NCBI GenBank assembly: GCA_002269645.1
Contig: NIVC01004277.1
Coordinates: 1 to 52,018, forward strand
Direction of reading: 5' to 3'
Length of the DNA: 52,018 bases
Origin: Macrostomum lignano
Taxonomy: Eukaryota
Part shown: one piece after another, positions 1-41,004 of the stretch
Position numbering within the stretch: position 1 is the stretch's first letter
Layout of the letters: each line of letters starts with the position of its first letter
The notes under the pieces: model-generated
Database searches by the model: none
The model's input: the letters and a program-made list of their open reading frames with translations, nothing else
Told to the model about the DNA's origin: nothing
Translations under genes and position numbers: made by a program

Positions 1-1145
1 CTCGCTATCTACCATAAAACTAAGTTTCACTGCAACAGGCTAAATAAAACGTTTCTGTAGTCTATGGCCGCTGCCTAAGCGGGGAATGAACTTTACTTAG
101 TGTATTTTGGTATGATATTAGCAAGGCTGCCAAAAAGTAACAAAACTGGACTCAAAATGAGAAGCAAACAACAGCATAAAAACAAAAACAATTTTTGGTT
201 GCAGAAAAAATATAAAATTGTCGATAAAAATTCTGCAAGAACAATACACATTAGATTAAAAATGTGCTGCAAAATTTAAGAAATCATCACTTTTCGACAA
301 TAGCAATGTAATTATTCATATTTAATTTGTTGTACAACATAGCTAGCTGTACCGAAATTATTAAATTCAACACATAGACACTTAATATTTATAGATATAA
401 ATATTTAGCTCAAGACACTAAGCGTAGGAAAGAAGCGATCCTTAGTTTAAAACACAGTTTAGAGCTAATTATAAAATTGATAATAGAAACGCCGATACGG
501 AAGCCAACAAAAGCAGTAAAACATAATTAAAATGATCTACTGGATTTGAAAATTGCTCTATAGGAAACACTTTTTACGATTATACTTGAATAGTGACTGG
601 TTACAAGCAATTTAAGCACTAAAATATTACATGATTAATTCAATAATTAGAATTTTTATCGTCAATATTGCTTTGGTCGATTAAGAGCTCATTCACACCG
701 CCATTAAACAACGCCAAGTTTCATGTCATTACAAAATTTGTACATTCTACATTAACTCCTTCTCAACATCAGTCGTGGAGTGCCGGCCATAAAAACAGCC
801 ATGATATCTGAGAGCTTGTGCACGATGTGCGCAGAAGTCAGCGGAATGGGCCTTACAGTCTGTAGGGACGAAATCACCGAAGGCGTTGCATTAGAGAGCC
901 CACGATCCCTTTATTACAGTGAATGACTGTAAACGCTTCATTTATGACAATATGATGACGGTGTGAAAAAATTATGGTGACAAGAAATCACTGTTTTAAT
1001 AAATAAAGTACGAATGTTTAGCTATTGGTCATCATTGATTAAAACTCAAAATTCTTGATGCAGTGCTGCATAACTGCAATTTTTTATCGGTAAAGTGGAC
1101 AGGAACATCCAACCTGAACATAAACAAATGTACAATAACATCGAT

Positions 1146-3043
1146 TCAAGGAGCACTGGGAGGCACACCCAGATACGGAGGTACTGAAGCCTGGGCGCCG
1201 CCAGAAGCGGCAGGATAGGCCGGCGGTGGTGCAGTCGGAGCCGCAGCTCCAGGAGCATAGACTGGACCTGCAGGATAGCCAGGCTGAGGGGCGCCAGGAT
1301 ATCCTGGACCCGATTGAGGCACACCGGGATACGGAGCACCAGGATATTGAGCTCCTCCTGGTTGAGTGCCAGGGTACGGAGCGCTTCCAGGAATTCCGGC
1401 ACCACCAGCAACTAACGGAGCGTCGTTGCGAACTCGAGGCGGACCAGCTCGAATTCCGCGACGCCTCATCCACTCGCACACCTGATTCGGAAGCTCCGCC
1501 AGTACCTCCTTCGCCAAGGCATACCTGCTGCGATCAATGCTGCCACCCTGAATGAAACGACGCAAAGGAACGAATTGGACGACATCTCTTTCGGCGATCA
1601 TCGACCCGCAGCGAAGTCGTTTGTCGTCGGAGTCGAGCTCCTCCATCGCAGAGAAGTCCTCGTCTCCGACACCAACTATGATTATGGACATCGGTAGAGA
1701 TGACGCCTTGATGATTGCCTGCTTCGTCTTCTCGAAGTCCGTGATGATTCCGTCAGTGATGATCAGCAGTACAAAGTACTGAGCTCCTGTCTGGTGAGCC
1801 GCAGCCATTGACGCTACGTGGTTGATCACGGGCGAAAAGTTTGTCGGGCCGTACAGTCGCACCGCTCTGATGCAAGACCGATAGGCCGCGAGAAGACCTG
1901 GCATTCCTGCGCAGTACGGGTTTTCGGGCTGCAGAGTCAGCGAGAACGCATCCTGAACTCCCGAGAACATTGGAGGCAACAGAGCTCCGAAGCCCAGTCC
2001 GGGAAACTGCTTGTCTGAGTCGTAGTCCTGCACAATCTCTCCTACCGAAATTATCGCCAGCTCGTACTGGTTCGGTCGGCCGTCGGCGCTCACGTGGTGC
2101 AGCGAGCGAGGGTCTCTGGGTCTCCGTTGCTGCCCGTGAAGTCGATTGCAACCGTGAAGTGCAGCTCAGTGCCGCCCTGAATGTAGTCGACGAACGAGTC
2201 GATGGTCTCGATTCCGATCTGGCTGAACACGATGGTTCCAGCCGACTTTTTCTTCTTGCTGATGAGGGTTCGTTGGGCGGAGCGGCTCCGGGCGACCTCC
2301 TGCTCCAAGCTCTCCAGACTGCTGTAAAAGCTGCCGATAAAATCGTGCGACCCGTCGCTGTCGTAGTCGTGGCAGTCGAAGCGAAGTAGCAGCTGCCTGT
2401 TTCCGCGGCACAAACGGTTCAGTGGAACCAAAAATTTGGCCCATCGCGGGTTCAAATTGTTCTTGATTACTTCGGTACGATGTACAAGTGTCCAATGTCG
2501 GACTTTATTGACTTCATTTTCACTCGTAATTTCCTCCATTGGCTGATAAATTTCAAGGTAAGGATCGGATTTTCCAAGAAAGTCTTTTTTGTCAAGCTTT
2601 TTTCCTTCGGCAATGAAACTGACTATTTGTTTGCACTCTTGAAGCTCGAAACACGTGATTATAATTGTGGACTTCTTGTGTCCAGTTTTGGACAAAGTAG
2701 TTTCGAATCGACGTCGGCTTACAAGCTCGCCGATCGAAGTCTCCAACTCGCCGAGAAAGTCGTGTTCAGACAGTCGAGCACTCGGACTGTCCAAGTCGTA
2801 AATTTGAAACTTCACCAGCTGACGCTCCTCGAACATGAAGTCGACAATGAACCGATGGCTGAATTCGGGATCAAGCGTGTTGTTCAGCTTTTCAGTTCTG
2901 CCGATTTCTTGAAAATTAGAAGTTCCCGGCTGGCGCAGGAACAGGACGCACTGGGGATCTGACTTGGAGGTGACGTCGCGGTCAGGCAGATTTCTGCAGG
3001 ACACGCTGATCTCAACGCGACTGGTGAGGCTTGGGCCGGACAT
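1146..3043 (-). CDS. CPNE: Copine (C2A-C2B-vWA) with Gly/Pro/Tyr-rich tail, copy 1; intronless CDS, ~632 aa once a 1-bp deletion at 2118-2120 is restored
   Basis: ORFs 2090-3052 and 1146-2093 join into a copine: C2 motifs (SKSDP, LDKKDFLGKSDPY, DYDSDGSHDFIG), AIDFTGSNG, and vWA motifs LLIITDG and SIIIVGVG. ATG at 3043 (MSGPSLTSRVEI) aligns with the copy 2 start (MAAPQLTSRVEI). GGG at 2118-2120 is GGGG in copy 2 (6669-6672). Confidence 0.93.
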
Positions 3044-4191
3044 CAGGAACAAGTTAGTACCGATTAAACTCGATTCGGTTTAATACAGATTACCGCCCGT
3101 GTAATTAGTGTAGCTTTACTTTACTTGCATAGAAAAATGTCACCCTCATAATGCTACAATCGATGAGCAAAGTAAACATCCTGCCCTAAAATAGGTTTGC
3201 TGTTATCGTACTTTACTCGTTCAGGATCTGAAGAATGAGATTATATGCCTATGCAAGAGGCCATTGGCAATGAACTAATCTTAGTAATTACGACCTAGTT
3301 CTAGATTAGGCATGCAAACTTGGCTGAAGTTACTATTTTAGAAAGATTAACTGGAATGTTGTCAAGAAGCAGTAAATGATTTATTAACTAATAATTTTAT
3401 CGTACTTTTGCACAATTCCATAAGGAACAATTTAAATATTTGGAAAATCAGCACTTTTTGAATAAGCGAGATTTTTTTAGGCCTTGATCAAGTAATATAA
3501 CGAAGCAAAAATATAATGAATATACAATTTCATTATTTAGCTTGACGGCAATGTCGGAATAGCAGACGTACCGGTAGGTATTCAAAACCAGTAAATATTA
3601 ATTTCGTGGATACATGATTTAAAAACATACAATTGCGGCAAAATTGGATTGGCAAATAGTAGCAGTATAAATAGAGTGGGAAAAGTATTTTAATTAAAGT
3701 ACAAAACAGTTCACGTCCTATCCATCGGATGCATTAATCCTCTCTTGTGGAAAGCAAAAGCAGAATAACTATTTAGTAACAAGAATTATATTTTCATAAC
3801 TACTGACGCGCAGTACTTTAAATTACGATTTCCAATATCATTCTATAGAAAAATTAATAATTTCGATAATTCCGTCAGACAGTAAATTAGGCCCTTTTAT
3901 TGCCTCTACTAGTAATACAAATTAAAGCCAGCTTAGATCATTAACAGCTAGCAGAAACTCTGCCGATTACAATAGAAAACCAGTTTGAATCTTTTTTAGG
4001 CATCTCAACTTTATGACAATTTGGTTAGGATGCATTCGAGTTGCTGATACTGGCATAGAATTTCTATTCCTTTCAGTGTGGCCATAGATAAGTGAAACAA
4101 GCGGGGAATAATGTATCGGTATTTATTCCCCACTACTCAGGCCTGGCCATAGACTATAGGAATGTATTCCTTCGGCCTGGCGCAATAAAAC

Positions 4192-4889
4192 CAAGGACGA
4201 CTTAAGTAGAAGGACGGGAAACCTCGTTTCTTAGAAAATTTTTGAAGGCACTTTTTTTCCGAAAAAATACACTGCGGAGATAGGAAATTTTCATTTTTTC
4301 AGCACAAAAATTGCTATTACTTTTGATAGGAGGCAGATCCAGTGTTCATCTTTTGATATGTTGTGCCTTTTTTATTGCTCTATCGATATTTATAAGGCTT
4401 TTCGTTCAGAAAATTAGATTTCTATGTTAATTTTTCATTCTACGTATATTTCCTGTACCTGAAAATCACAATAATGCATGACACAGCTCCAATATTTGGT
4501 TTTATGAATCTATTTTATCATCTCTGTTACGAATATTTGCTACACAGTCAGTTAAGAATGACAAAATAGACTTATGAAACCAAAGAGCCGAGCCGTGGCA
4601 GTCTAATGTATTTCAAGCACAAGACGCGCGAAAATATACGTAAAATAAAAAATTAACATAGAAATCTAATTTTCTGAACGGAAAGCTTCATAAATATCGA
4701 TAGAGCAATAAAAAAGGCACAACATATCAAAAGATGAACACTGGATCTGCCTCCTATCAAAAGTAATAGCAATTTTTGTGCTGAAAAATGAAAATTTCCT
4801 ATCTCCGCAGTGTATTTTTTCGGAAAAAAGTGCCTTCAAAAATTTTCTAAGAAACGAGGTTTCCCGTCCTTCTACTTAAGTCGTCCTTG
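4192..4889. mobile_element. MITE / non-autonomous DNA transposon with ~260-bp terminal inverted repeats
   Basis: 4192-4451 is the reverse complement of 4632-4889 apart from a few substitutions and homopolymer differences. Termini are CAAGG...CCTTG. Flanking 8-mers AATAAAAC (4184-4191) and AATGAAAC (4890-4897) match 7/8, consistent with a TSD. No internal ORF. Confidence 0.85.
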
Positions 4890-5426
4890 AATGAAACTCC
4901 AATAAATATGTTTCTATAGTCTATGGCCGGGCCCAAGTGGGAAATAATAAACATTATAAGCTAGTATATGCTACTTAAACGCACTATAGTTTAATTTATT
5001 CAGAGGAAAAAGCTGTCTATGGTTGCAACTGAGGGCTTCACCCTCACACCAAATACTGGCCCCACACCGACTGTCGCAATGGCAGTGTGACTTAGGCATA
5101 AATGTCTATGACACCATATTAATAGGATAGCCATAGCAACTCTTGACTCCAAAACAAAATGATAAAAAAATGAAAAAGCCATTAAAAGCTACAAATTCAA
5201 TGCACATGGGTAGGCTGGATGATAAATAAGAGCATTAAAACAATACTGAAAAATCAACGCATCGAATTCCTTTAAACGAAATAAATTAAAGAGTAATTAC
5301 AACAGCAGACGTATTGTTTTTTTAAATGAGGAGATTACAAGACAATTCAAGACAAATAGAGCTAGCCATCAATGTTTTATATCAAATTTATACAGCAGAC
5401 AGCAAGACTCGCAAAAAATCGTCTGT

Positions 5427-7592
5427 TTAAGGAGCACTGGGCTGCGTCCCTCCGGCTACAGAGTAATTTTGAGCCAAGTGGCCATAGCCGGCTTGACGAG
5501 AGCTCACTTGAATACCGGGGTAATTTGCGGCGCCATACTGGCCTGGACCAGTAGGATATCCTCCAACATTTTGATAAGCACCAGGATACCCTGCGCCACC
5601 AGTAGGGCACCAGGATACCCTGCGCCACCCGCATGGGCACCAGGATACCCTGCGCCACCCGTAGGGGCACCAGGATACCCTGCGCCACCCGCATGGGCAC
5701 CAGGATACCCTGCGCCACCCGTAGGGGCACCAGGATACCCTGCGCCACCCGCAGGGGCACCAGGATACCCTGCGCGACCCGCAGGGGCACCAGGATACCC
5801 TGCGCCACCCGCAGGGGCACCAGGATACCCTGCGCCACCCGTAGGGACACCAGGATACCCTGCGCCACCCGTAGGGCACCAGGATAAGAAGGAGCTGAAG
5901 CAGGAGAGCCATCAGTACCTGGTGCGGCAGTAAATGAGGATGGGGCAACAGGGCCTGACGCTGGAACATTTGAATCAGATCGCACTTTAGGCGGACCAGC
6001 TCGAATTCCGCGACGCCTCATCCACTCGCACACCTGATTCGGAAGCTCCGCCAGTACCTCCTTCGCCAAGGCATACCTGCTGCGATCAATGTTGCCACCC
6101 TGAATGAAACGACGCAAAGGAACGAATTGGACGACATCTCTTTCGGCGATCATCGACCGCAACGAAGTCGTTTGTCATCGGAGTCGAGCTCCTCCATCGC
6201 AGAGAAGTCCTCGTCTCCGACACCAACTATGATTATGGACATCGGTAGAGATGACGCCTTGATGATTGCCTGCTTCGTCTTCTCGAAGTCCGTGATGATT
6301 CCGTCAGTGATGATCAGCAGTACAAAGTACTGAGCTCCTGTCTGGTGAGCCGCAGCCATTGACGCTACGTGGTTGATCACGGGCGAAAAGTTTGTCGGGC
6401 CGTACAGTCGCACCGCTCTGATGCAAGACCGATAGGCCGCGAGAAGACCTGGCATTCCTGCGCAGTACGGGTTTTCGGGCTGCAGAGTCAGCGAGAACGC
6501 ATCCTGAACTCCCGAGAACATTGGAGGCAACAGAGCTCCGAAGCCCAGTCCGGGAAACTGCTTGTCTGAGTCGTAGTCCTGCACAATCTCTCCTACCGAA
6601 ATTATCGCCAGCTCGTACTGGTTCGGTCGGCCGTCGGCGCTCACGTGGTGCAGCGAGCGAGGGTCTCTGGGGTCTCCGTTGCTGCCCGTGAAGTCGATTG
6701 CAACCGTGAAGTGCAGCTCAGTGCCGCCCTGAATGTAGTCGACGAACGAGTCGATGGTCTCGATTCCGATCTGGCTGAACACGATGGTTCCAGCCGACTT
6801 TTTCTTCTTGCTGATGAGGGTTCGTTGGGCGGAGCGGCTCCGGGCGACCTCCTGCTCCAAGCTCTCCAGACTGCTGTAAAAGCTGCCGATAAAATCGTGC
6901 GACCCGTCGCTGTCGTAGTCGTGGCAGTCGAAGCGAAGTAGCAGCTGCCTGTTTCCGCGGCACAAACGGTTCAGTGGAATCGAGAATGGAGCCCATTTTG
7001 GGTTTAAATTCTTTTTAATGAATTCGGTTCTGTGCACCAAGACCCAACTGCGAACTCTGGGTACTTCTGATTCAGTTTGTATTTCATCCATCGGCTGATA
7101 AATCTCCAGAAAAGGGTCAGACTTGCCAAAGAAGTCTTTCTTGTCAAGTTTGACGCCTTCGACGCGAAAATTGGCAATTAGTTTGCACTCCTGAAGCTCC
7201 AAGCAGGTCAGTATAATGAGAGATTTTTTTGTACTGCCAGTCTTGGTCAAAGCCGCCTCGTACTGTCGCCGACTGACAAGTTCACCAACAGTGGTCTCAA
7301 GTTCGCCTAAAAAGTCATGGTCCTGCAGGGCTGCGCGCGAGCTGTCAACATCGTAGAGCCGAAAAATGACTACCTGTCTTTCCTCGAAGCAGAAGTCTAC
7401 TTGAAACTTGTGATTGAATTGCGGGTTTAGGGTGTTCTGTATGCATTCAGTGCGACCAAATTCATGCGTTGATGTTGGCGTTTTCATGAACAGGACACAC
7501 ATTGGATCAGATTTGGACATGACATCACGATCTGGCAAGTTCTTGCAAGAGACAATGATCTCCACCCTGCTAGTGAGCTGAGGAGCTGCCAT
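5427..7592 (-). CDS. CPNE: Copine copy 2 with (GAPxGGAGYP)x10 tail; intronless CDS, ~722 aa once three 1-bp deletions (6157-6158, ~5876, ~5605) are restored
   Basis: ORF 6150-7592 covers C2A, C2B and most of vWA. It continues in the 5377-6162 frame (SMIAERDVVQFVP), passes through the 30-bp repeat and ends QPSAP* at 5427, matching the copy 1 ending PPSAP*. CC at 6157-6158 is CCC in copy 1 (1605-1607). Confidence 0.92.
5582..5886 (-). repeat. Coding 30-bp minisatellite, 10 units (GAPTGGAGYP-type), in the copine 2 tail
   Basis: Units CAGGATACCCTGCGCCACCCGyAGGGGCAC start at 5582, 5611, 5641 ... 5851. The first and last units are 29 nt. Confidence 0.95.
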
Positions 7593-8175
7593 GTCTGTGA
7601 ATGTTCATAAATTGTAGCAACTTATTATTATTTTACTAGCCTATAGTAGAGAAATTTAACAAGATCAAAAATGTTTTGAAAAAATCAGGAAAACTATGCA
7701 TTTATGATGTGTTGAGTGCATGCTTAGGGATTAGTGGAATATGTATCTAGCTACTAATTTTTTGACCAGCTATGGCTAATATGTCTATATTGTAACATTG
7801 ATTTATTATTAACTTAAAGACCCTAACTAACCTAAATTTGAGCTAACAACAGAAAAGGATTTCAATTAGTTGCAAAGCTATAAATATGATCAATTTGTTA
7901 CTAAAATGAACATATATTCATTGGTATTATATATAGGGTTAATATTTATACTTAAAAACTTCAAAGATAGCCAAGTCCCAACTGTATATATGCTAAGTAA
8001 TAGCCTACTGAAAGAATATAATATCCTATTCATAGGCAAGTTCTAGCTAGTGCTATCATAAACCAACTATAACAATATATATGCAAGCCTAATTCTAGTC
8101 TTAATATATACAAGAGGTTTAATCTTATGCATAAGACTAAAATTATATGGCTAGATAATAAAATAAATATTTTAA

Positions 8176-8206
<31 letters not shown>

Positions 8207-8207
8207 A
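8176..8207. repeat. (TAAA)n microsatellite
   Basis: About 8 tandem TAAA units. Confidence 0.85.
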
Positions 8208-11200
8208 TTTATTTATCTTTTGGCACGAATTTGAATTTAAAAAACAATACTAGATATAGGCCTATGGCATACTAAACCAAAGTTTTTTATCAATTGATTT
8301 TATAAATATAAGTTTATATAAAAATGCTAATTAAAAACAACCTAGACCTAGACCCTAATGATAATATATGTAGAATATAAAGTAATAATTTATAATAGAA
8401 TTAATAATAGAAACAATTTAAGGCAATTTATTTATACATTAAAGTCAATTAGGCTAAGCTAAAACATAAAAATTTATTTTAGTCTGAGTAATATTCCTAA
8501 GCAAATATAAACAAAAAATATAAGGTCTTTATAATAAACTATATAAAGTTAATAGACACTTCAAAAAGCATTTAGCATTAGATAGGGCCTAGGGGCCTAT
8601 ACAGTATAAATAAAAAGTTTATTATCAACTTCCAATTAGCTAAGCCCAAAAGGTATAGAAGTGAAGAACGCTGTTTTAAAAATTTGATTCAAGTTGCATT
8701 TAGATTTAGGCTTATTAAGCCATTAGTATTGAAATTGCCAAATGTTAGGCTTAGACATAGCTAGGCTTAAGTAAGGATTTGAAATCTAGTCTATGAATCT
8801 ATCAATTGTTTTTTAATAAAAATAATGTAAATTTACTTAATTTTCATTGGCTAGCCTACACTACACATAATTTCTTTCTTTTCCTATTATTTATGGGCGT
8901 CAGTTTTAATGACACTGTAATTTTATTAGAATGGTCTTTATGCAGTATGCAGCCAGTACTACTATTGCCATAATTATTGCTACAAGGAATAGTCCTGGCT
9001 AGTGACATTAGAAGAAATAAGTACTCGTAAAATAAAACACTTTACTTAGGTTAACTAATTTGAAGTTAGAGTGAAGTTATAGAAGTTATAGAATCATTGT
9101 GGCCATAGGCCTATTATCCTAGGGGCTAGGCCTAAAACGCTTTAATAAATTACTTGCCCTAAGGGTGCCCTAATGCTTAGGCCCTATCTTGAAAGCATTA
9201 CCTAGTACTAGTAGGTCACTAGGGCTATCACATGTGATGTGTGTATGTAATAGTTTTAAAAATCAATGCAAGGACCCATGTTAAAAATGCCGTTTGTACA
9301 CACTGTATCAACTTAAACTAAATATTATAAACTATACTATATCATTGGTTTGATTTAAATAACGATTAATATTGCTGTATTTAGCAAAAAATTATTTATT
9401 AAATATTAATTTTTGAACCATAGTCCTCTAAAGTTTAATGTTTCGTGTATCGTGCTAACTAGCTTCCCAGTCCAGGACTACTCAAGCAGAGGACAGGACA
9501 CTTGGAAAATATTAGGAGGCAGGTTTTACCGAAAAAATATATTACGGAGTTGCGATTAATCGAATTATTATTAGTTGCCAAGTTCAGGGCCAAGAATTCA
9601 ACAGGGCATTACCGCGTACCTGCATTCTAATCTTGCCAGCTCTGCCTATTTTCTCATCTGCCATTGAATCGTGGCATGAAGTGTGAGTAGAGATTGCGCC
9701 TGTCACAGGGGATGGAATAGAAGCTGAGGATCAGAGTGCAAAATTACCGAGTATGATCGCCGAGTACATCCAAATATAATGATCATAACAGTGTAACGTA
9801 TTTCGAAGTACATAAGTGTACTATTCGAGCCCCATCACATGTACATGAAGTAGGAAAAGACATTAGAAAGACGTTATCTATTATCTACCTTTGTGATCCT
9901 GGGCTTGAGGGAATTGTAGCCTAGAATCGCCAACCAACTATAAATGGGGATCATTTTATATCCAATTAAAGTCCTCGTTCACAACACTGTCTATAACTGT
10001 CCCTTATGTGTGGCGTTTATTCGCGACCTGGCCTTGAGGCGCGCCTTGTGATGCTGAACGCGTATTCTGTTGTTGTTGCTGTACTTGAAGATGAGCAGTT
10101 AACTGCTTCCAATAAGAAATACTGCCATACTGTGACAAATAACTATATAGTTCTTATCGATCTGTATAGTGTATTTTTAGGAAATTTAACCAAATATTTT
10201 CTTAGAAACGAAGTTTTATTTCCCGTCTTTCTGCACTTATATTTTGTCCTTGTGTAAGTACACTGTAATGTGCATCAAATATGTGCACCAGTTGAGCTGC
10301 TGCTGACGTTACATGTACGTCCTACTCGTGAAAAGCTATATGATCGTAGCTCTGAAAAATCCAATTGTGACTTGACTTGGATCATTTGTTGTGGTATATA
10401 ATTGTAGAATGCACTGTACATGTATATATAGAAGTAGTTCTTCTTACGCGGGATGCTTAGGCATGATGTAGGACGCATGCTGGCCGTAAGTGGTTCGTAA
10501 GCCGGAGGTACATGTAGCGGGGGCGTAATCTGGGAAGAAAATGTTATAGCGTGTTCACGCCCAAAAGCATTCCACTTTATGTTCTTAGAACGCGTCATGT
10601 AAGTCCACTCGCTGTACTGCTTCTAGCTCGTAGCCTGCCCTCCGCTCGTTTTCAAACATAATAGAACGTTGCCTTGCTACTATGACTATAGTAGCCGTCT
10701 ATACAAATATATTGAGTTTCCTGTTGGCACAACCGGTGTATTCTAAAGTCACAACAGAAACAAAATGACATGAAAAAACGGCCCAGTTGCTAAGACGTCT
10801 CAAAATTATCCATTTTCTAAAAGGAAATTCTGTTTCTGATTTTTAGTAGCTGCTCAATGATTCAGAATATTTAGAAAAAAAACGCCCTGTCTGTATAAAT
10901 GTACATGTGCATATTTGTCCATAGTGCGCTGAATTTTGGGCAGAGACTCGATTGTATTTTACGGAGTCTGCCTCGAGACAGACGGATGTCTGGAGTTTGA
11001 GCACAGTGCACATGAACTCGTAGCTTGCACTCTGCTTTATTATGGTGTGTTAAATTATATTAAAAAAGTTTTTATTGGATTTTTTATTAAAATTCAATAT
11101 TTTGTCCTTACATTTTGAATTATAAGTGAACGCGAAACGAGATTCCCGACTCACCCTCTGCATCAGAAATAACGGATAGCTGGATATCCGCGAGAGGGCT

Positions 11201-11528
11201 TTTGCTTAAATGTCTGGTATTAGATTTATTATTCAATAATTTGAATTACTGTGCGAATCTTACAGAATTTGAGCAGCGAGGTGAGACAACCAATTGCTGC
11301 ATGCTTTGTGGCCAGCGAATTTTTTGCGTATATTTCAGCTGTAGCCATGGCTGCTGAATGTCAAAATGGAAGGCAAAAAATAGCTGGAATATTTCTTATA
11401 CGTTGGTTTAATTTAATTTTTCTTACGCTTCTTACAAAACGCTTCTTAAAGTCCATGCAAATGCTAACGGTACGATAGCAGGTTTCAACAAAAGTACCAT
11501 TTGTACCATTTTAATAAAAATATGTCCC

Positions 11529-12078
11529 TTGGGGGGCGCCCCTGTCTCTTGGTGAGCGCCCCCGTCTCTTGGTGGTCTCCCCTGTCTCGTGGTGGGCGCC
11601 CCTGTCTCTTGGGGGGCGCCCCTGTCTCTTGGTGAGCGCCCCCGTCTCTTGGTGGTCTCCCCTGTCTCGTGGTGGGCGCCCCTGTCTCTTGGGGGCGCCC
11701 CTGTCTCTTGGTGGCCGCCCCTGTCTCGTGGTGGTCTCCCCTGTCTCTTGGGGGGCGCCCCTGTCTCTTGGTAGTCGCCCCTGTCTCTTGGTGGTCGCCC
11801 CTGTCTCTTGGGGGGCGCCCCTGTCTCTTGGTGGTCTCCCCTGTCTCGTGGTGGTCTCCCCTGTCTTTTGGGGGTGCCCCTGTCTCTTGGTAGTCGCCCC
11901 TGTAACTTGGTGGTCGCCCCTGTCACTTGGTGGTCGCCCCTGTCACTTGGTGGTCGCCCCTGTCACTTGGTGGTCGCCCCTGTCACTTGGTGGTCGCCCC
12001 TGTCACTTGGTGGTCGCCCCTGTCTCGTGGTGGGCGCCCCTGTCTCTTGGTAGTCGCCCCTGTCTCTTGGTGGTCACC
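11529..12078. repeat. 20-bp minisatellite (GGTGGTCGCCCCTGTCTCTT), ~27 units
   Basis: Direct reading. It includes an exact 80-bp four-unit duplication, 11531-11610 = 11611-11690. Confidence 0.95.
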
Positions 12079-12564
12079 CAGCTGTCTCTTTGTATCCTAG
12101 GCTGCTGGATCCCACGTCTAAGAGGAGACAAAAGTTAGGTTTGGATTAAGTTTTAAGACAGGTCCAGGTTAGGGCTCAGTTTTAGGTTAGGCCATTATGA
12201 TGTAGGATAAACTAATTTTAGGGTTAGGTTCGACAGCCAACCGTTGTATAGACGCAGTTTTATCCTAAATAACTTTGGTTAAAACCGATCCCGAAGCAAT
12301 CGACAAAATCAAGACAAGTGTTTAACGCGTGTGGTATGCTGTGCAAAGGGCGTCCAATGTTTTAACTTTGCACTCATATCTTTTTATTTATTCTGAGATT
12401 GACTACTAAATTAGACTCAATTATACTCTAAATCTGATGATAAATAGTTGATTGTTGGCATTCAGATTTTTTAGCATCTATTTATCCGACAAATAGTTCG
12501 TATTGTCGTTTGCCACAGTTCCAAGCTCTTTAAATAATTAGTCGCTCTTAACAATAATAACATT

Positions 12565-13115
12565 TCATTCGTTTTCAAACACCACGGCCTCGGCGCAGTA
12601 GCCGCTGAGGTAGCGGACGGTGCAGGTCCGGCAGCAGCACCTCTGCACCAGGTTGTCTGTGTTAAGTCTGCACCTCAGCTTCAACAAAGAGACGCTCTTC
12701 TTCATTCTCTCGCTGCCTGAAACAACAGATCAATTGGTGAAACGCTTACTGTGTCTCTGTATTCTGACTTTTAATAAAAGCTGCATGGTTTCAATGCAAC
12801 ACGACTCTCACTGAGTATCTCTCGAGTCCTCTTTGCGGTGCGGAACCTGCCGTAGCTGTTGTACATCCTGCCGTCGCAGACTTTAGCCACGGCGTCGATT
12901 AGTTCGCGGCCGCAGAAGTTGACAACCGTGTTCTGCGGGTAATAGACAGATTAATGTGCTAATAGCATTATTGACGGTAGCGTTTGGCACGATAAAAGTA
13001 CTTTGTACGAGCTCACCGGATTTTTCTCGTCGAAATCCAAATAGTTATAGGAAGCGAGAAGACCACTGAAACAGCTGAGCAGGATAACTGCGAACAGTAC
13101 ATTTGCAAATTGCAT
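12565..13115 (-). CDS. ilp: Insulin-like peptide precursor, 3 exons (13115-13017, 12932-12812, 12716-12565), 123 aa
   Basis: Hand-spliced with GTGAG...CAG introns of 84 and 95 bp and matching phases (0, 1): MQFANVLFAVILLSCFSGLLA-SYNYLDFDEKNPNTVVNFCGRELIDAVAKVCDGRMYNSYGRFRTAKR-TREILSSERMKK-SVSLLKLRCRLNTDNLVQRCCCRTCTVRYLSGYCAEAVVFENE*. Shows a signal peptide, B-chain CGxxL C-x11-C, A-chain CC-x3-C-x8-C, and dibasic sites KR and KK. Confidence 0.9.
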
Positions 13116-13367
13116 GGCGACTAGTTGGGAGAATAGGATTTTTAAAATAAAAATTGGCAAGGAGTGGCGCTTGCTTGTCTGCAGTTATTAACGAGCAGCC
13201 TTCAACGGACGCAGGATTTTGAGGCAATGAGATTTCGGCTTACATTTTATTGATTTTATAGACTTTGCGAAGCCAAGGTGATTGGAGGGCTCATGGAAAA
13301 CCAATTGAATATAACAAATACTACTGTTTGCCATCGACATTCCTATAGTAGTCAATGAAAAATTACC

Positions 13368-14317
13368 CATTCATTCTGCTGCAATCAAGTCATTCATTCT
13401 GCTGCAATCAAGTCATTCACTCTGTTGCAATCAAGTCATTCACTCTGTTGCAATCAAGTCATTCACTCTGCTGCAATCAAGTCATTCAATCTGCTGAAAT
13501 CAAATCATTCACTCTGTTGCAATCAAGTCATTCATTCTGCTGCAATCAAGTCATTCACTCTACTGCAATCAAGTCATTCACTTTGCTGCAATCAAGTCAT
13601 TCATTCTGCTGCAATCAAATCATTCACTCTGTTGCAATCAAGTCATTCATTCTGCTGCAATCAAATCATTCACTCTGTTGCAATCAAGTCATTCACTCTG
13701 CTGCAATCAAATCATTCACTCTGTTGCAATCAAGTCATTCATTCTGCTGCAATCAAGTCATTCACTTTGCTGCAATCAAGTCATTCATTCTGCTGCAATC
13801 AAGTCATTCATTCTGTTGCAATCAAGTCATTCACTCTGTTGCAATCAAGTCATTCACTCTGCTGCAATCAAGTCATTCATTCTGTTGCAATCAAGTCATT
13901 CACTCTGCTGCAATCAAGTCATTCACTCTGCTGCAATCAAGTCATTCACTTTGCTGCAATCAAGTCATTCATTCTGCTGCAATCAAATCATTCACTCTGT
14001 TGCAATCAAGTCATTCATTCTGCTGCAATCAAATCATTCACTCTGTTGCAATCAAGTCATTCACTCTGCTGCAATCAAATCATTCACTCTGTTGCAATCA
14101 AGTCATTCATTCTGCTGCAATCAAGTCATTCACTTTGCTGCAATCAAGTCATTCATTCTGCTGCAATCAAGTCATTCATTCTGTTGCAATCAAGTCATTC
14201 ACTCTGTTGCAATCAAGTCATTCACTCTGCTGCAATCAAATCATTCACTCTGTTGCAATCAAGTCATTCACTCTGCTGCAATCAAGTCATTCACTCTGCT
14301 GCAATCAAGTCATTCAC
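13368..14317. repeat. 23-bp minisatellite (GCTGCAATCAAGTCATTCACTCT), ~41 units
   Basis: Direct reading. It explains the long spurious ORFs at 13355-14928. Confidence 0.95.
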
Positions 14318-14887
14318 AAAGCAACAATCAACCGTTCACAAAACAGCAATTTACCACTCACAAAGCAATCATCCAAAATTCACAAAGCAACCATCCAATA
14401 TTCACAGAGCAACCATCCAACATTCACAGAGCACCAATTTACTATTCACAAAGCAACCATCCAACATTCACAGAGCACCAATCTACCATTCACAAAGCAA
14501 TCATCCAACATTCACAGAGAACCAATCTACCATTCACAAAGCAACCATCCAACATTCACAGAGCACCAATTTACTATTCACAAAGCAACCATCCAACATT
14601 CACAGAGAACCAATCTACCATGCATTCACAAAGCAACCATCCAACATTCACAGAGCACCAATCTACCATGCATTCACAAAGCAACCATCCAACATTCACA
14701 GAGCACCAATCTACCATGCATTCACAAAGCAACCATCCAACATTCACAGAGCACCAATCTACCATTCACAAAGCAATCATCCAACATTCACAGAGAACCA
14801 ATCTACCATTCACAAAGCAATCATCCAACATTCACAGAGCACCAATCTACCATGCATTCACAAAGCAACCATCCAACATTCACAAAG
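14311..14887. repeat. 22-bp two-subunit minisatellite (ATTCACAAAGCAACCATCCAAC / ATTCACAGAGCACCAATCTACC, some with extra ATGC)
   Basis: Alternating 22-mers forming 44/48-bp dimers, contiguous with the 23-bp array. Confidence 0.9.
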
Positions 14888-15016
14888 TAATTAACAATCA
14901 AAGCAGGGTGAATGTCAGTTTTAGATAATTTTTACGAGCTCATCATGTGATTGATATGCGAGTAATATGAAATTATTGATGGTTTTAGTGTGAAAGGAGG
15001 ACTGTTACGGAGCAAG

Positions 15017-15190
15017 TCGTGAATGGCAGATCCCTTAGTTGTGAATGGTAGATTGCTAAGTTGTGAATGGCAGATCCCTAAGTTGTGAATGGCAGACTGC
15101 TAAGTTGTTAATGGCTGATCCTTTTTAAGTTGTGATTGGAAGATCGTAAAGTGGTGAATGGTATATTGCTAAGTTGTGAATGGCAGATAG
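15017..15190. repeat. Degenerate 22-bp minisatellite (AGTTGTGAATGGCAGATyCyTA), inverted relative of the 14311-14887 array
   Basis: About 8 units. 15039-15055 is the exact reverse complement of 14479-14495. Confidence 0.8.
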
Positions 15191-15578
15191 ATAGAGAACA
15201 GTTAATGTGAATAGCTGATCGTGAATGGAAGAACCAAATACTATTATTAGCGTGCTTTTTCTGATATTTGTTTTGCTTTGGTTACAGAGACAAATTTGGC
15301 AGTGCGCTCAAGCTGGATCAGCGATCCAAAGATTTCCTCGGCATTAACTTCTTTGCAGACACGCAGCGGGCGTTGTGTTGCAGAAACTGACGTTTGATTG
15401 CTTTGAGCAATTTTAGACAAACTTCGTGCCAGAGAAATCTGGAAAAATAGCTGAGCTTTTCTGTCGACAGGTGTCCCCTGTCAGGCCTTTAAAATTGCAC
15501 AGCTGACTGAGCAGCGTCTCAACTCAGGAAATAAATTTCAATTGACGTGCAGCGAAAACTCTCCACCCACGATTTTTG

Positions 15579-16912
<1,334 letters not shown>

Positions 16913-17721
16913 CATCTTGTGCACTGTATAACTTGCCTAGCAGTGTTTACAGGGTGATGGTTTGCTGAGTCTGGGCTTAAGAAAGCTCTCCATCAAATTT
17001 CGACTCCGAGATACGAAGTAGTTGAGCTCGCGAAATGTGTGCATTCATATACTTAGGATATTGTTAGCAAAGTCCAACTAGGTCGAACAAACAAAGTCTG
17101 ACAAGCAAAGTCCATTCAACCGCCTCCTACAAGAAAATACTTGCCTAGAGTACTAAAAGATAATTCAAAATGCAAAGTCATCTAAGCGCGGTACGCAGTG
17201 CTTGTGCTTATTTCTGGTTCAATTTCGTTTCATCGTCTTGTTTATTTGCTGGAAGCAAGAAGGAGCCGCATCAAAGGCAAAAAAGTACAATTTTCAGCCC
17301 TCTATTTAAAAGAAAATTAGGCCTAATTAGTGAAGTATCCTTTGTTGCATTAGCTAATATGAGCAACATGCTACTTTAATATTGTCTAGCGCAAAAGTGA
17401 GAATAGCTGCATACATATTATAGGTGCCTTATTACTGTTAAAAAACTAGCTATACGAAATGTCCAACCTTGCAAGTGAAATATACATTATCTATTAGTGC
17501 AAACTGGGAATCAATTCAGAGGCCACATGCTATGGCGACGCATGCCGCACTCACAAAGGTGTCAAATTAGCCATATAAATTTGTGCAGCGCAATGCCAAC
17601 GGATGAGCTAACAGAAATGGTCTATCTTAATTTAAGTTTTCATTTCATAAAAAAGAGACGCGTACGTTCAAAAAAACATGATGCAAAACTCGGGACACAG
17701 TACTAATTGTCCAGTCTGTCA

Positions 17722-26204
<8,483 letters not shown>

Positions 26205-37674: not shown

Positions 37675-40600
37675 CACATACATACATGTACACCGCCGCA
37701 AAAGAAAGCAAAAGGAAAAGGGGGCAGCACGGGACGGAAGAGCAAAAAAAAGGGGGAAAAGAAACGGAAATGTGAGAGCGTGGCGGCAGTGTCAGAGCAC
37801 TCTCCTTCTGGCTTGCTCCCTGAAGGCAGCCGCAGCGTTGGTCTGGCCGATGACACCGGCATCAGCCAGCAGGCAGTCCACGTACCGGCGCGTCCTGGCC
37901 TGCCCTCGGCGCCAGGGGCCCCGCAGCGTGAGCAGCAGGACGTCCTGCACCGGTTCAGGGCAGTAGGTTTCCGCGCGGATCACGTGGCCCGCCAGCTGCA
38001 GCCGCCGCCGCCGGATGGTCTCGCTGGGTGGTCGCAGGCCGGCTCGTCGGTAGAGGGCCGCGTTCGAGACCACCTCAGGGTAGGAGATGCCGAAGGCCGC
38101 GCGCAGCAGGCTGGAGTGGGCCGCGTCCAGCCGCTTCTCCAGCGTCTCGGTCAGCGTCCACGTCTCGGCGTTGTAAGTCAGGACGGTCTCGACCACCGCC
38201 TGAAACAGCCGAGACCTCAGGCGATCTGGCAGCGCGGCGCTCTGCAGAACAACCCGGACTGAGCGGAAGGCCGCCCAAGCCAGGCCTCTGCGTCGCGCCA
38301 GGTCCTCCTGAACGCTGGGCACCAGACCGCCGAGGTACGTGAAGCGCGTGCAGCGGGGTAGAGGGGCCGCGTGACCGTCTGCGCCGCGGCAGGTGATATT
38401 GGCAGGCAGCTCCGCTGGCACCGTCAGGACCTCCGTCTTGTCGGTGTTGACAACCAGGCCGACCGTAGCCGCTATCGCCACCAGGCTGTCCAGCATCCGC
38501 TGGGCTCCATCCGCCGTGGAGGCCAGCAGCGCCAGGTCGTCGGCATAGCCCAGCAGCGACAGTCTCTTCTCTGGATGGTGGCTGCTCGTGCGCCTGCACA
38601 GCATGAAGCCGTCGGCGTCGGATGGAAGCGCAGTCCGCAGCACCCAGTCGAGGACCAGCACGAACAAGAAGGGCGCTAGCGTGTCGCCCTGCAGCACTCC
38701 AGATGTTGTACTGAATGGGTCCGACAGCCCGTCGGGCGTCACCACGGCGGCTTGAGTGTCCTGGTAGAGCGCCATGACTGCGCTGACCAGGCGCTGGGGC
38801 ACGTGGTAAGCCCGGAGCACCGGCACAAGGGCGCCGCGCGCCACCGAGTCGAACGCCTTTCTGAAGTCAACGAAGACACAGATCAGCGTCGCCTGGCGGG
38901 TGCGCGCCTCCTCGATTGTCCTCCTGAGGGCAAGGATCTGGGTCGCTGTGCCCCGGTGTGGCCGGAAGCCGTTCTGCTCGTGCCGCAGAAACGGGTCCAG
39001 CACCGGTTGCAGCCGCGTCAGCAGGATCTTGTTGAAGAGCTTCGCGGCGCAAGACATCAGCGAGATGCCCCTATGTTCTTCTTTCCGAGTTGTGCCGGGC
39101 TTCTTTGGGATGGGGATCATGTGGGCCGTCGTCCACTCAGTTGGGGCTGCACCCCCGTCAAGTACGCGGTTCATCACACCGGCGACCGCACGGGCCACCG
39201 GCAGGACTCGCAGCGCCTCGACAGGGATCTCATCCGGGCCGGCCGCTTTTCCACCAGGGGACTTCTTCGCCTGCAGCACCACCTCGTCCAGAGTAATGGG
39301 GCTGACGTCGAAATCCTCCTCCTTGGGCAGGGCCACTTCCGGCGGCAGCGGCATCTCCGCCTGCAGCACCGGCGGCGGCGCGTTCACGATGGCGCCGAAA
39401 AAGTCCCGCAGCTCGTTCCGGCGGGCCTCCGCCGTGTCGCCGGGGAGGTTGAGGCTCGTGCGGCTCTTCCTCCCGGTCAGCGCGTTCACAGCGCTCCACA
39501 CGGCGCGGCGCTTGCCGTCGTGCCCTGCCGTTGTCACCGTCCTGATGGTCTCTTCTACGGCGGCCTGTTGTCCTTGCTCATAGGCGGCTGCGAGGGCCGC
39601 CTCGGCTTCGTCCACCTCCGCAGTCCTGCCCGCCCGTCGCAGCTGCTCAAGCCTCAGCCTCGCACTTTGCACTTCCGGGTCCACCTCCCAGACCGGCCGA
39701 CCTTTCTGCAGGGGCTTCACCAACGGTAGGGTCCACTCCGCAGCAGATTGGACGGCCGTGCAGATCTCGGGGTAGTCGGCTTCCTTCTTGCCGTCGAGGG
39801 CATCCACAAACGCGCGGGCGAAGTGAACCTGGGTCGCATCGTCACGCAGAGCCCGGAAGAAGTGCTTCGGCTTCCGCTTGGGCGGCCGGTAGAGCGGGTC
39901 CTTCAGCTTGATGTCGCAGAAGAGCAGCTTGTGGTCGGACTTCGGCGCCAATGGCAAGATGGTATCGCAGTTGGTCACACGGCCACGCTCTCGAAAGTGC
40001 AGCAGCACGTGGTCCAGCTGCGCCAGCCTCGTCGTGGCATTCCGGCGGCGGTTGTTGTTGCGCCGCGGCCGCTTGCAGCCGGCAAAGGTTGCCAGCCGCT
40101 GCTCGGGTTTCCGGAACCACGTGTTCATCGACACCATGTCATGCCGAGCCACGAAGTCGGTCAGCGCCTCGGTGTTGGCATTCTCGCGCGGGGTCACGAA
40201 GGGGGCCCGGTCTGACCTGCGCATGACAGCGTTCAGATCACCGAGCACGATCACCGTGTCCCGTTGTGCCACAGCCTCCACCTGCCCGGACAAGAACTCG
40301 AAAAAGACACGAGCTTCATCGGGGTGGGCAGCTGTCGGCGCGTAGGCGCAGAAAATGTGGGCGCTCCGACTCCTCAGCCGCAGGTCGATCCGCAGCAGCC
40401 GAGGGGACAGGCTCTGGCAGCACACACTCTGTTGCAGCTTTGGCCCGACCAGCACTCCTACTCCTCCATGACCTCTCTCGTCCGCTGATGTGTACAGGAG
40501 GCTCCAGCCAGCTCCCAGCTCTTCACGCTGGAGGCCGGGGCCGGCCACGATAGACACCTCCTGCAGAGCCACCAGGTCCATCTTCGTCTCCTGAGCCAGC

Positions 40601-41004
40601 TTTGCCAGCAGGCCCTGGCGCCAGTTCTCCTTGAGGGTCCGGCAGTTCCAGGTTGCCAGCCAAAGGGGGTGCTCTGGTACGGCTGGGGCCCGATGCTGTT
40701 GGGCCTCGTGGTCCCCGGCGCCACCCGGAGGATCCAGGGCCTCGGCCTCCCGCCTGCCTGCGCGCTTTGCTGCTCCATGGGCACGACTGCGCCGGTTGCG
40801 CTCTCTGCGCCGCTGGGTGCGGCGGGCAGCACTGCGCTGGCCGCGGGGGGTCTTGGCCTTGCCGCTGTTGGCTGCCGCAGCTTGAGGGCGCGGCACTCCG
40901 AGCCAACCTTGGCTATGCTCCGGGGCGATGCTCTGCCCAGGGGTGCCAGGAGGTCGCGGCATATTTATACGCCAGGGGCGTATAAATAAGATGGCTCTTA
41001 TTTA
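37675..41004 (-). mobile_element. Full-length RTE-clade non-LTR retrotransposon
   Basis: Single APE+RT ORF. 13-bp TSD TCTCTCATAAGTA at 37662-37674 and 41005-41017 (16 bp with one mismatch). The 3' end is a short (TATG)n tandem tail rather than poly(A). Much more GC-rich than the flanks. Confidence 0.93.
37792..40962 (-). CDS. RTE ORF, 1056 aa: Arg-rich N-terminus, apurinic-type endonuclease, reverse transcriptase
   Basis: EN motifs TWNCRTL, LQEV, VLGDLNA, LDHV, SDH. RT motifs HEQNGFR, FVDFRKAFDSV, GVLQGDTLAPFLF, YADD, FTYLG, then LTYNAETWTL and RRLQLAGHVIR. No stops or frameshifts. Confidence 0.96.
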   Translation of the reverse strand: MPRPPGTPGQSIAPEHSQGWLGVPRPQAAAANSGKAKTPRGQRSAARRTQRRRERNRRSRAHGAAKRAGRREAEALDPPGGAGDHEAQQHRAPAVPEHPLWLATWNCRTLKENWRQGLLAKLAQETKMDLVALQEVSIVAGPGLQREELGAGWSLLYTSADERGHGGVGVLVGPKLQQSVCCQSLSPRLLRIDLRLRSRSAHIFCAYAPTAAHPDEARVFFEFLSGQVEAVAQRDTVIVLGDLNAVMRRSDRAPFVTPRENANTEALTDFVARHDMVSMNTWFRKPEQRLATFAGCKRPRRNNNRRRNATTRLAQLDHVLLHFRERGRVTNCDTILPLAPKSDHKLLFCDIKLKDPLYRPPKRKPKHFFRALRDDATQVHFARAFVDALDGKKEADYPEICTAVQSAAEWTLPLVKPLQKGRPVWEVDPEVQSARLRLEQLRRAGRTAEVDEAEAALAAAYEQGQQAAVEETIRTVTTAGHDGKRRAVWSAVNALTGRKSRTSLNLPGDTAEARRNELRDFFGAIVNAPPPVLQAEMPLPPEVALPKEEDFDVSPITLDEVVLQAKKSPGGKAAGPDEIPVEALRVLPVARAVAGVMNRVLDGGAAPTEWTTAHMIPIPKKPGTTRKEEHRGISLMSCAAKLFNKILLTRLQPVLDPFLRHEQNGFRPHRGTATQILALRRTIEEARTRQATLICVFVDFRKAFDSVARGALVPVLRAYHVPQRLVSAVMALYQDTQAAVVTPDGLSDPFSTTSGVLQGDTLAPFLFVLVLDWVLRTALPSDADGFMLCRRTSSHHPEKRLSLLGYADDLALLASTADGAQRMLDSLVAIAATVGLVVNTDKTEVLTVPAELPANITCRGADGHAAPLPRCTRFTYLGGLVPSVQEDLARRRGLAWAAFRSVRVVLQSAALPDRLRSRLFQAVVETVLTYNAETWTLTETLEKRLDAAHSSLLRAAFGISYPEVVSNAALYRRAGLRPPSETIRRRRLQLAGHVIRAETYCPEPVQDVLLLTLRGPWRRGQARTRRYVDCLLADAGVIGQTNAAAAFREQARRRVL

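What the first reader, a model, noticed from the sequence alone, without database searches (positions are those of the whole stretch)
1437..6979. Mosaic copine paralogues: sharply bounded 991-bp near-identical tract between otherwise diverged genes
Seen: 1437-2427 and 5989-6979 match by eye except three substitutions (1540/6092, 1611/6162, 1626/6177) and two 1-bp indels. C2A, the first half of C2B and the tails are heavily diverged at both DNA and protein level. The tract covers late C2B plus the entire vWA domain and stops where the tails begin. Inference: recent or recurrent ectopic gene conversion homogenises the protein-interaction module while C2A and the tails diversify, giving a modular paralogue system.
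Basis: partly seen in the sequence, partly recalled or inferred. Interest (0 to 1): 0.7.

Follow-up and report, generated by a model that had tools for sequence, protein, structure and literature searches.

The report
Gene conversion between tandem flatworm copine genes
Neighbouring copine genes of the flatworm Macrostomum lignano have repeatedly copied stretches of sequence into one another, a well-known process (gene conversion between tandem duplicates), so this is a clean but ordinary example.

Summary
Window 1437-2427 and 5989-6979 differ by three substitutions and two 1-bp indels, while the rest of the two genes is about 62-66% identical.

The locus is Macrostomum lignano. It holds two intronless copine genes on the minus strand: A at 1146-3043 and B at 5427-7592.

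Both indels are homopolymer-length differences private to this assembly. Each breaks a reading frame here. In the public Mlig_3_7 contig neither indel is present, gene A is intact (632 aa), and the A/B tract differs by three substitutions only.

That contig also holds a third tandem paralogue, C, just beyond the window start. The three genes form a patchwork:
- C2A is 97% identical between A and C but 62% to B.
- The linker and first half of C2B are diverged in all three, with dS saturated.
- The next 110 nt are shared by A and B only.
- The vWA core is 99.5-100% identical in all three.

Permutation tests give 0/20000. GC3 is 0.73 in shared patches and 0.35-0.48 in unshared ones.

Recurrent ectopic gene conversion is well supported. 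This is a known phenomenon of low novelty.

The parts
1146..3043 (-). Copine gene A: intronless, C2A-C2B-vWA/Copine plus a Pro/Gly/Tyr-rich tail. It is frameshifted in this window only.
   Evidence: ORFs 2090-3052 and 1146-2093. Pfam finds C2 and Copine. It equals P0001 / BOX15_Mlig019106g2, 632 aa and intact in Mlig_3_7.
5427..7592 (-). Copine gene B: intronless, same architecture, longer tail. Three frameshifting homopolymer errors in this window.
   Evidence: ORFs 6150-7592, 5377-6162 and 5427-5969. Pfam finds C2 x2 and Copine. L001 reads through all three sites, and the composite CDS is 2169 nt / 722 aa without internal stops.
1437..2427 (-). Near-identical tract, copy in gene A (second half of C2B, linker, whole vWA/Copine domain).
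   Evidence: Codon-alignment nt 620-1611.
5989..6979 (-). Near-identical tract, copy in gene B.
2698..3043 (-). C2A segment of gene A. It is 97.4% identical to off-window gene C but about 62% identical to gene B: a second, older conversion patch.
   Evidence: A-C has 9 differences in 345 nt, dS 0.109.
2428..2697 (-). Segment of gene A (C2A-C2B linker and first half of C2B) that matches neither B nor C. It is 66-67% identical to each, with dS saturated. It shows that A is an old lineage of its own.
6980..7592 (-). Diverged 5' part of gene B (C2A, linker, first half of C2B).
2118..2120 (.). Homopolymer run one base short in the window.
   Evidence: Mlig_3_7 has the longer run and an intact ORF.
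6157..6158 (.). Homopolymer run one base short in the window.
   Evidence: Mlig_3_7 has the longer run and reads through.
5578..5886 (-). 30-bp tandem repeat, 10.4 copies, 94% matches, in the tail of gene B. In the correct frame it encodes GYPGAPxGGA decapeptides. Two further one-base homopolymer shortfalls lie at about 5605-5607 and 5874-5876.

Best explanation
The window comes from the flatworm Macrostomum lignano. It holds two members (B, then A, in the direction of transcription on the minus strand) of a three-gene, same-strand tandem array of intronless copine genes. The third member, C, lies just beyond window position 1.

The three genes are old duplicates. Where nothing has been exchanged they are 62-67% identical with saturated synonymous divergence, and their spacers share no detectable similarity.

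Superimposed on this are patches of near-identity made by repeated non-allelic (interlocus) gene conversion. In this process a break in one copy is repaired using a neighbouring paralogue as template, which overwrites a stretch of sequence without changing the flanks.

At least three events of different age are needed:
- A with C over C2A (dS about 0.11).
- All three over the vWA core (dS about 0.01).
- A very recent A with B event over 992 nt (three differences).

That tracts end where divergence becomes too high for heteroduplex extension is inferred from general knowledge of recombination; it was not tested here. The higher GC3 of the converted patches is consistent with GC-biased repair.

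Shown here: the mosaic, its statistics, the dS contrast, the GC3 contrast, and the intact ORFs in the other assembly.
Inferred: the molecular mechanism, the direction and number of events, and the GC bias as a consequence of conversion.

From family membership, the proteins are presumably Ca2+-dependent membrane-binding copines. All three are probably functional, because the diverged parts have dN well below dS.
For: - Organism and locus. The best protein hit, P0001 (M. lignano BOX15_Mlig019106g2), equals gene A. Its contig NIVC01002056.1 aligns to window 1-13058 at 99.6%.
- Architecture. Pfam finds C2 x2 and Copine.
- Tract. Three substitutions in 992 nt, against 220 differences in the preceding 619 nt.
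- Third paralogue and three-way mosaic.
- Region-wise dS. It is saturated in unshared segments. In shared ones it is 0-0.046 (A-B), 0.013 (C against A/B core) and 0.109 (A-C in C2A).
- The difference densities differ significantly. A-C C2A 9/345 against A-B tract 3/992 gives Fisher p=0.0005. The C-specific patch 8/60 against its surroundings 4/822 gives p=1e-7.
- Sawyer-type permutation. 0/20000 for A-B and for A-C; B-C is not significant.
- Constraint control. Against the distant paralogue P0005, C2A (60.9% aa) and the tract (60.6% aa) are equally conserved. Protein-level constraint therefore cannot explain 100% against 62%.
- Homology is confined to the CDS and the spacers are unrelated.
- GC3 is 0.72-0.73 in homogenised segments and 0.35-0.48 in unhomogenised ones. 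At alignment nt 619-729, A/B have GC3 0.73 and unconverted C has 0.35. Third-position S-versus-W differences there are 17:3 (p=0.0026), while the control segment shows no bias.
- The same B-A-C order and mosaic appear in a fused gene model, P0122, built on another assembly version.
Against: - No raw reads could be examined.
- Mlig_3_7 and the earlier ML2 assembly were built from the same PacBio data set. Mlig_3_7 was polished with short reads, which can erase small differences between near-identical paralogues. The true A-B identity could be somewhat lower than 99.7%.
- No orthologous array from another Macrostomum species or strain was available. The classic test, paralogues closer than orthologues, was not done.
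- The GC3 contrast rests on short segments. It could reflect the composition of the donor rather than biased repair.
- The direction and number of events are not resolved.
Confidence: 0.85

Rival explanations
1. A single structural event, not conversion. On this reading gene A is a hybrid made by unequal crossing-over or partial duplication between B-like and C-like ancestors, and the identical tract is simply the young duplicated piece.
For: The genes are direct tandem repeats 4.55 kb apart, the geometry that favours unequal exchange. Gene A resembles C at its 5' end and B in its 3' two-thirds.
Against: - Gene A has a 270-nt segment (window 2428-2697) that matches neither B nor C, with dS saturated against both. 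A is therefore not a simple B/C hybrid.
- The A-B tract is bounded on both sides by diverged homologous sequence, and A's tail start goes with C again.
- The spacers share no similarity.
- The patches have significantly different ages.
- C has an internal unconverted 60-nt island.
Confidence: 0.07
2. Assembly or polishing artefact. The identity is produced by read mis-correction, consensus mixing or short-read polishing across paralogues, or one copy is a chimera.
For: - This window clearly carries consensus errors: 31 single-base indels against Mlig_3_7 in 13 kb, and four of the five that fall inside the two genes break the reading frame in the window.
- The public assemblies share one PacBio data set, and Mlig_3_7 was Pilon-polished.
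- The P0122 model from another assembly version differs at two tract residues, in the direction of the neighbouring paralogue.
Against: - Both copies are placed 4.55 kb apart between unique flanks inside one contig by different assemblers.
- The same three diagnostic substitutions appear in the window and in Mlig_3_7, with no substitution differences in either gene.
- Correction or polishing can blur copies that are already about 97-99% alike. It cannot turn 62-66% identity into 100% with single-base-sharp edges.
- Gene C shows its own, different mosaic.
- A collapse would give one copy, not two.
Confidence: 0.05
3. No exchange at all. The tract is simply under extreme purifying selection, including at synonymous sites, since an old duplication.
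For: The vWA/Copine domain is the best conserved part of copines across animals.
Against: - Synonymous divergence falls from saturation to zero across a single-codon boundary.
- Against the paralogue P0005 the tract is no more conserved than C2A: 60.6% against 60.9%.
- The boundary position differs between gene pairs, and C2A shows the same effect for a different pair.
Confidence: 0.02

Closest known systems
Interlocus (non-allelic) gene conversion and concerted evolution of tandem paralogues. Textbook cases recalled from general knowledge, not tested here: human fetal globin genes HBG1/HBG2, red/green opsin genes, Drosophila Hsp70 copies.
   Same: Same-orientation tandem duplicates a few kb apart. 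There is a sharply bounded tract of near-identity inside otherwise diverged homologous genes. dS collapses inside the tract, different segments group different paralogues, and converted segments have higher GC3.
   Different: Here three genes show at least three tracts of different age within about 1.6 kb of intronless coding sequence, in a flatworm with a recently duplicated genome. No population or cross-species data are available yet. Nothing is mechanistically different.
Copine family (Pfam PF07002 with two PF00168 C2 domains; vertebrate copine-3/copine-8 are the closest named relatives)
   Same: C2A-C2B-vWA architecture. About 50-53% amino-acid identity over 98-99% of the query to copine-3/-8 of fishes, molluscs and brachiopods.
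   Different: The genes are intronless, whereas the M. lignano paralogue P0005 has at least five introns. They also carry 95-185-residue Pro/Gly/Tyr-rich C-terminal tails that the compared copines lack. In gene B the tail is built from a 30-bp tandem repeat.
GC-biased gene conversion (gBGC)
   Same: Segments that have been exchanged are GC3-rich. At homologous codons the converted copies carry G/C where the unconverted copy carries A/T, 17:3 at third positions.
   Different: Only a correlation on short segments. There is no polarisation with an outgroup and no genome-wide baseline for M. lignano.

Membership tests
Copine protein family | Two N-terminal C2 domains | tested here: met
   PF00168 matches with two stretches in gene B (E=7e-31) and in the N-terminal ORF of gene A (E=6e-30).
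Copine protein family | C-terminal vWA-like Copine domain | tested here: met
   PF07002 at E=1e-77 (gene A) and E=4e-64 plus E=7e-9 (the two pieces of gene B). Weaker VWA and vWA-TerF-like hits also appear.
Copine protein family | Uninterrupted reading frame (a functional gene rather than a pseudogene) | tested here: inconclusive
   Both genes are broken in the window. Gene A is intact in Mlig_3_7. Every frameshift in gene B is read through in one or the other assembly, and all the indels are homopolymer-length differences. dN is well below dS in the diverged parts. Expression was not examined.
Copine protein family | Ca2+-dependent phospholipid binding | not testable with these tools
   A biochemical property, inferred from family membership only.
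Interlocus gene conversion | High-identity tract flanked on both sides by diverged but homologous sequence in paralogues of one genome | tested here: met
Interlocus gene conversion | Tract longer than expected from the distribution of differences (Sawyer/GENECONV-type test) | tested here: met
   My own permutation of polymorphic sites: 0/20000 for A-B and for A-C. The GENECONV program itself was not run.
Interlocus gene conversion | Synonymous divergence is heterogeneous along the gene: near zero in the tract, high outside | tested here: met
   dS is 0-0.046 inside and saturated outside.
Interlocus gene conversion | Different segments support different relationships among three or more paralogues | tested here: met
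   Segment 1-346 groups A with C. Segments 620-729 and 1360-1419 group A with B. Segment 347-619 groups none.
Interlocus gene conversion | Paralogues within a species are more alike than orthologues between species (concerted evolution) | not testable with these tools
   No Macrostomum relative other than M. lignano appeared in the protein search. The next hit is a 56%-identical paralogue.
Interlocus gene conversion | Both copies physically verified by spanning reads and normal depth | not testable with these tools
   No read data were available. There is only agreement between assembly versions that share the same PacBio reads.

The most novel reading that the evidence does not exclude
The patchwork might not be a passive by-product of proximity but maintained by selection. 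On this reading the vWA partner-binding core is kept identical in all three paralogues, for example because they share one partner or co-assemble. The linker and first half of C2B, together with the repeat-built Pro/Gly/Tyr tails, are then kept different to give each copy its own membrane or adaptor specificity. That would be a conversion-maintained 'constant core, variable ends' protein set.
Probability: 0.08. Interest if true: 0.4.

Novelty: new member of a known kind. Interest (0 to 1): 0.2.

Why it matters
It gives a compact, well-resolved example of recurrent interlocus gene conversion in a flatworm model organism. The example has three genes, at least three tracts of different age, and a GC3 signature. 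It could serve as a test locus for conversion rates and GC bias in a neopolyploid genome.

There are also practical points:
- Short reads, RNA-seq quantification, RNAi probes or in situ probes aimed at the vWA region cannot tell the three genes apart. Only the segment at window 2428-2697 / 6980-7249 and the tails are diagnostic.
- Public annotation of the locus is faulty: one truncated model, one fused three-gene model, and gene C unannotated in Mlig_3_7.
- The apparent frameshifts in this window are assembly errors, not pseudogenisation.

Tried and rejected
- Cross-species orthologues. The protein search returned, above 56% identity, only M. lignano's own copies, so the concerted-evolution test could not be done.
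- Exact look-up of gene C and of the annotated gene B fragment. Neither translation I submitted was found as an exact sequence. The cluster does hold the annotated gene B fragment (P0121, 354 aa) and also gave the fused model P0122.
- Shared spacer or promoter sequence, which would indicate a young segmental duplication. None was found with blastn at word size 11; homology starts at the ATG and ends about 100 nt into the tails.
- Literature on gene conversion in Macrostomum or in copines. Nothing relevant.
- Pseudogene reading of the frameshifts. Rejected, because every frameshift is a homopolymer-length difference between assemblies, there are no substitutions in either gene, and each site is in frame in one assembly.
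- Constraint-only explanation. Rejected by dS and the P0005 control.
- Whether the distant paralogue P0005 sits in a similar array. It does not; it is a single gene with introns.
- Which assembly the window comes from. Not determined. It differs by its own homopolymer errors both from Mlig_3_7 and from the assembly underlying P0122.
Full report
**Observation.**
A repeat scan of window 1-12000 found three co-linear direct-repeat blocks with offsets of 4552, 4551 and 4552 nt. A gapped local alignment joined them into one match. Window 1437-2427 pairs with 5989-6979, with exactly three substitutions (1540/6092, 1611/6162, 1626/6177) and two single-base gaps. Blastn of the tract against the whole 52-kb window finds these two copies and no other.

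The alignment continues beyond 2427/6979 for another 600 nt, but there it carries about one difference in three positions, right up to the edge at 2428/6980. At the other edge the sequences stop matching at 1436/5988.

**What the genes are.**
Both copies lie in long minus-strand reading frames. Pfam finds two C2 domains followed by a Copine/vWA domain. A protein search gave Macrostomum lignano BOX15_Mlig019106g2 (P0001, 632 aa) as the best hit. Its sequence equals gene A of the window, apart from a frameshift in the window. The next hits are a 56%-identical M. lignano paralogue (P0005) and copine-3/-8 of many animals at about 50%.

The contig that encodes P0001 is NIVC01002056.1 of assembly Mlig_3_7, held here as locus L001. 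It aligns to window 1-13058 at 99.6%. The window is therefore another assembly version of the same M. lignano locus.
- Gene A occupies 1146-3043.
- Gene B occupies 5427-7592.
- Both are on the minus strand and both lack introns.

**The two indels are assembly errors.**
Each indel lies in a homopolymer: GGG at 2118-2120 against GGGG, and CC at 6157-6158 against CCC. Each splits one gene into two ORFs in the window.

Comparing the window with L001 over 13 kb gives 47 differences. Of these, 31 are single-base indels, mostly in homopolymers. Inside the two copine genes there are five such indels and not one substitution. At every one of the five sites one assembly keeps the frame open: L001 at four sites and the window at one.

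In L001 gene A is intact, and gene B reads through the window's three frameshifts. A composite gene B CDS is 2169 nt without internal stops. With these corrections the A/B tract is 992 nt with three substitutions and no indel.

Mlig_3_7 was assembled with Canu from published PacBio data and polished with Pilon (PMC5730564). That fits this error pattern.

**A third paralogue changes the picture.**
L001 extends beyond the window start and holds a third intronless copine, gene C, at L001 15591-17474. It lies downstream of A on the same strand. A codon alignment of A, B and C shows a patchwork, given here in alignment nt:

| Segment | Region | A-B | A-C | Note |
|---|---|---|---|---|
| 1-346 | C2A | 62% | 97.4% (dS 0.109) | A groups with C |
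| 347-619 | linker, first half of C2B | 66% | 67% | B-C 64%; all three diverged, dS saturated |
| 620-729 | | 99-100% | 66% | C about 65-66% to both |
| 730-1359 | vWA core | 100% | 99.5% | all three alike |
| 1360-1419 | | 100% | 87% | C differs at 8 of 60 sites |
| 1420-1611 | | 3 differences | 1 difference | one to three scattered differences per pair |

In the tails, A and C stay similar for about 100 nt, while B differs and carries a 30-bp repeat.

**Tests.**
- *Permutation.* I permuted the order of the 313 polymorphic sites. No run of concordant sites as long as the observed one arose in 20000 trials, for A-B (observed 49, maximum 11) or for A-C (observed 49, maximum 22). B-C was not significant. 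The same holds for third-codon positions alone.
- *Age of patches.* The difference density of the A-C C2A patch (9/345) is significantly higher than that of the A-B tract (3/992, Fisher p=0.0005). The C-specific 60-nt island differs from its surroundings (8/60 against 4/822, p=1e-7). Several events of different age are therefore needed.
- *Constraint.* Against the paralogue P0005, C2A and the tract are equally conserved at the protein level (60.9% and 60.6%). Constraint does not explain the contrast.
- *Extent of homology.* Sensitive blastn finds no similarity between the spacers. Homology begins at the start codon. This fits an old duplication overlaid by recent exchange.
- *Base composition.* GC3 is 0.72-0.73 in exchanged segments and 0.35-0.48 in unexchanged ones. 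In segment 619-729 the exchanged copies A/B have GC3 0.73 and the unexchanged copy C has 0.35. Third-position strong/weak differences there are 17:3 (p=0.0026), with no bias in the control segment. This is consistent with GC-biased conversion but is not proof.

**Mechanism.**
The best reading is recurrent non-allelic gene conversion among three direct tandem paralogues spaced about 4.5-5.6 kb apart. That tract ends fall where divergence blocks heteroduplex extension is an inference from general knowledge of recombination.

A simple hybrid-gene origin by unequal crossing-over is disfavoured. Gene A has a 270-nt segment unlike either neighbour, and the tract is bounded on both sides.

An assembly artefact is unlikely for three reasons:
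- Two assemblers place both copies between unique flanks.
- The two versions share the same three diagnostic substitutions.
- Correction cannot create sharp-edged identity from 65% similarity.

It cannot be formally excluded without reads. Polishing may also have removed a few true differences.

A fused B-A-C gene model from another assembly version (P0122) shows the same order and mosaic. It has two residue differences in the shared tract. These are either consensus noise or segregating conversion states.

Conversion is supported. The proposed division of labour, with the vWA module homogenised while C2A and the tails diversify, is not.
- C2A is itself homogenised in the A-C pair.
- The 5' edges differ between pairs and fall within C2B (Pfam C2B about residues 143-250; the A/B tract starts at codon 206).
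- The diverged parts show dN 0.21-0.28 with saturated dS. That is ordinary purifying selection on old duplicates.

**Novelty.**
Searches of the paper library found nothing on gene conversion in Macrostomum or in copine genes. The phenomenon itself is textbook. This is a new, tidy instance of a known kind.

Noticed in passing
L001 15591-17474 (off-window, downstream of gene A): A third intronless copine paralogue (gene C, 627 aa). It is not annotated in Mlig_3_7. Its exact translation is absent from the protein collection.
   Followed up: yes
window 1146-7592; L001 5450-17474: Public annotation of this locus is faulty. Gene B is represented by a truncated 354-aa model (P0121). An older model (P0122, 1635 aa) fuses B, A and C into one protein, with invented introns that skip frameshift errors.
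   Followed up: partly
P0122 compared with L001 genes B and C: Inside the shared tract, P0122 has S where gene B has N (GGNIDRS). It has P where gene C has S (TLQSENP). Both changes go in the direction of the neighbouring paralogue. They could be consensus mixing or segregating conversion variants.
   Followed up: no
window 1146-3043 and 5427-7592; L002 10001-19064: Genes A, B and C have no introns, whereas the nearest other M. lignano copine (P0005) is split into at least six exons over 9 kb. The array may descend from a retrocopy that then duplicated in tandem.
   Followed up: partly
window 1146-1436, 5427-5988: Long Pro/Gly/Tyr-rich C-terminal tails (YPGAP-type motifs) that typical copines lack. 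Gene B's tail is a 30-bp x 10.4 tandem repeat encoding GYPGAPxGGA. From memory only, such tails resemble the N-termini of annexin A7/A11, which bind penta-EF-hand proteins. This was not tested.
   Followed up: no
window 4122-4951: A nested inverted repeat in the A-B spacer, with arms of up to 166 nt at 95% complementarity. It looks like a foldback or MITE-like element. It could be a fragile site that seeds breaks near the genes.
   Followed up: no
window 37792-40962 (-): A 1056-aa ORF with an AP-endonuclease domain and a reverse transcriptase domain, i.e. a non-LTR retrotransposon. Its GC content is 0.65-0.68, against about 0.42 in the surroundings.
   Followed up: partly
window 18962-26204 (-): Exons of a P-type cation-transporting ATPase (Cation_ATPase_N, E1-E2_ATPase, Cation_ATPase, Hydrolase and Cation_ATPase_C domains).
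   Followed up: partly
window 11523-18917: A run of satellites: 20-bp x 28 (11523-12090), 23-bp x 41 (13368-14317), 22/44-bp (14311-14887), (TCTA)n x 335 (15579-16917) and 8-bp x 88 (18210-18917). The long 'ORFs' listed there are artefacts of these repeats.
   Followed up: partly
window about 12566-13058 (= L001 1-493): The Mlig_3_7 annotation places the end of a gene with an insulin-family domain here, upstream of gene B.
   Followed up: no
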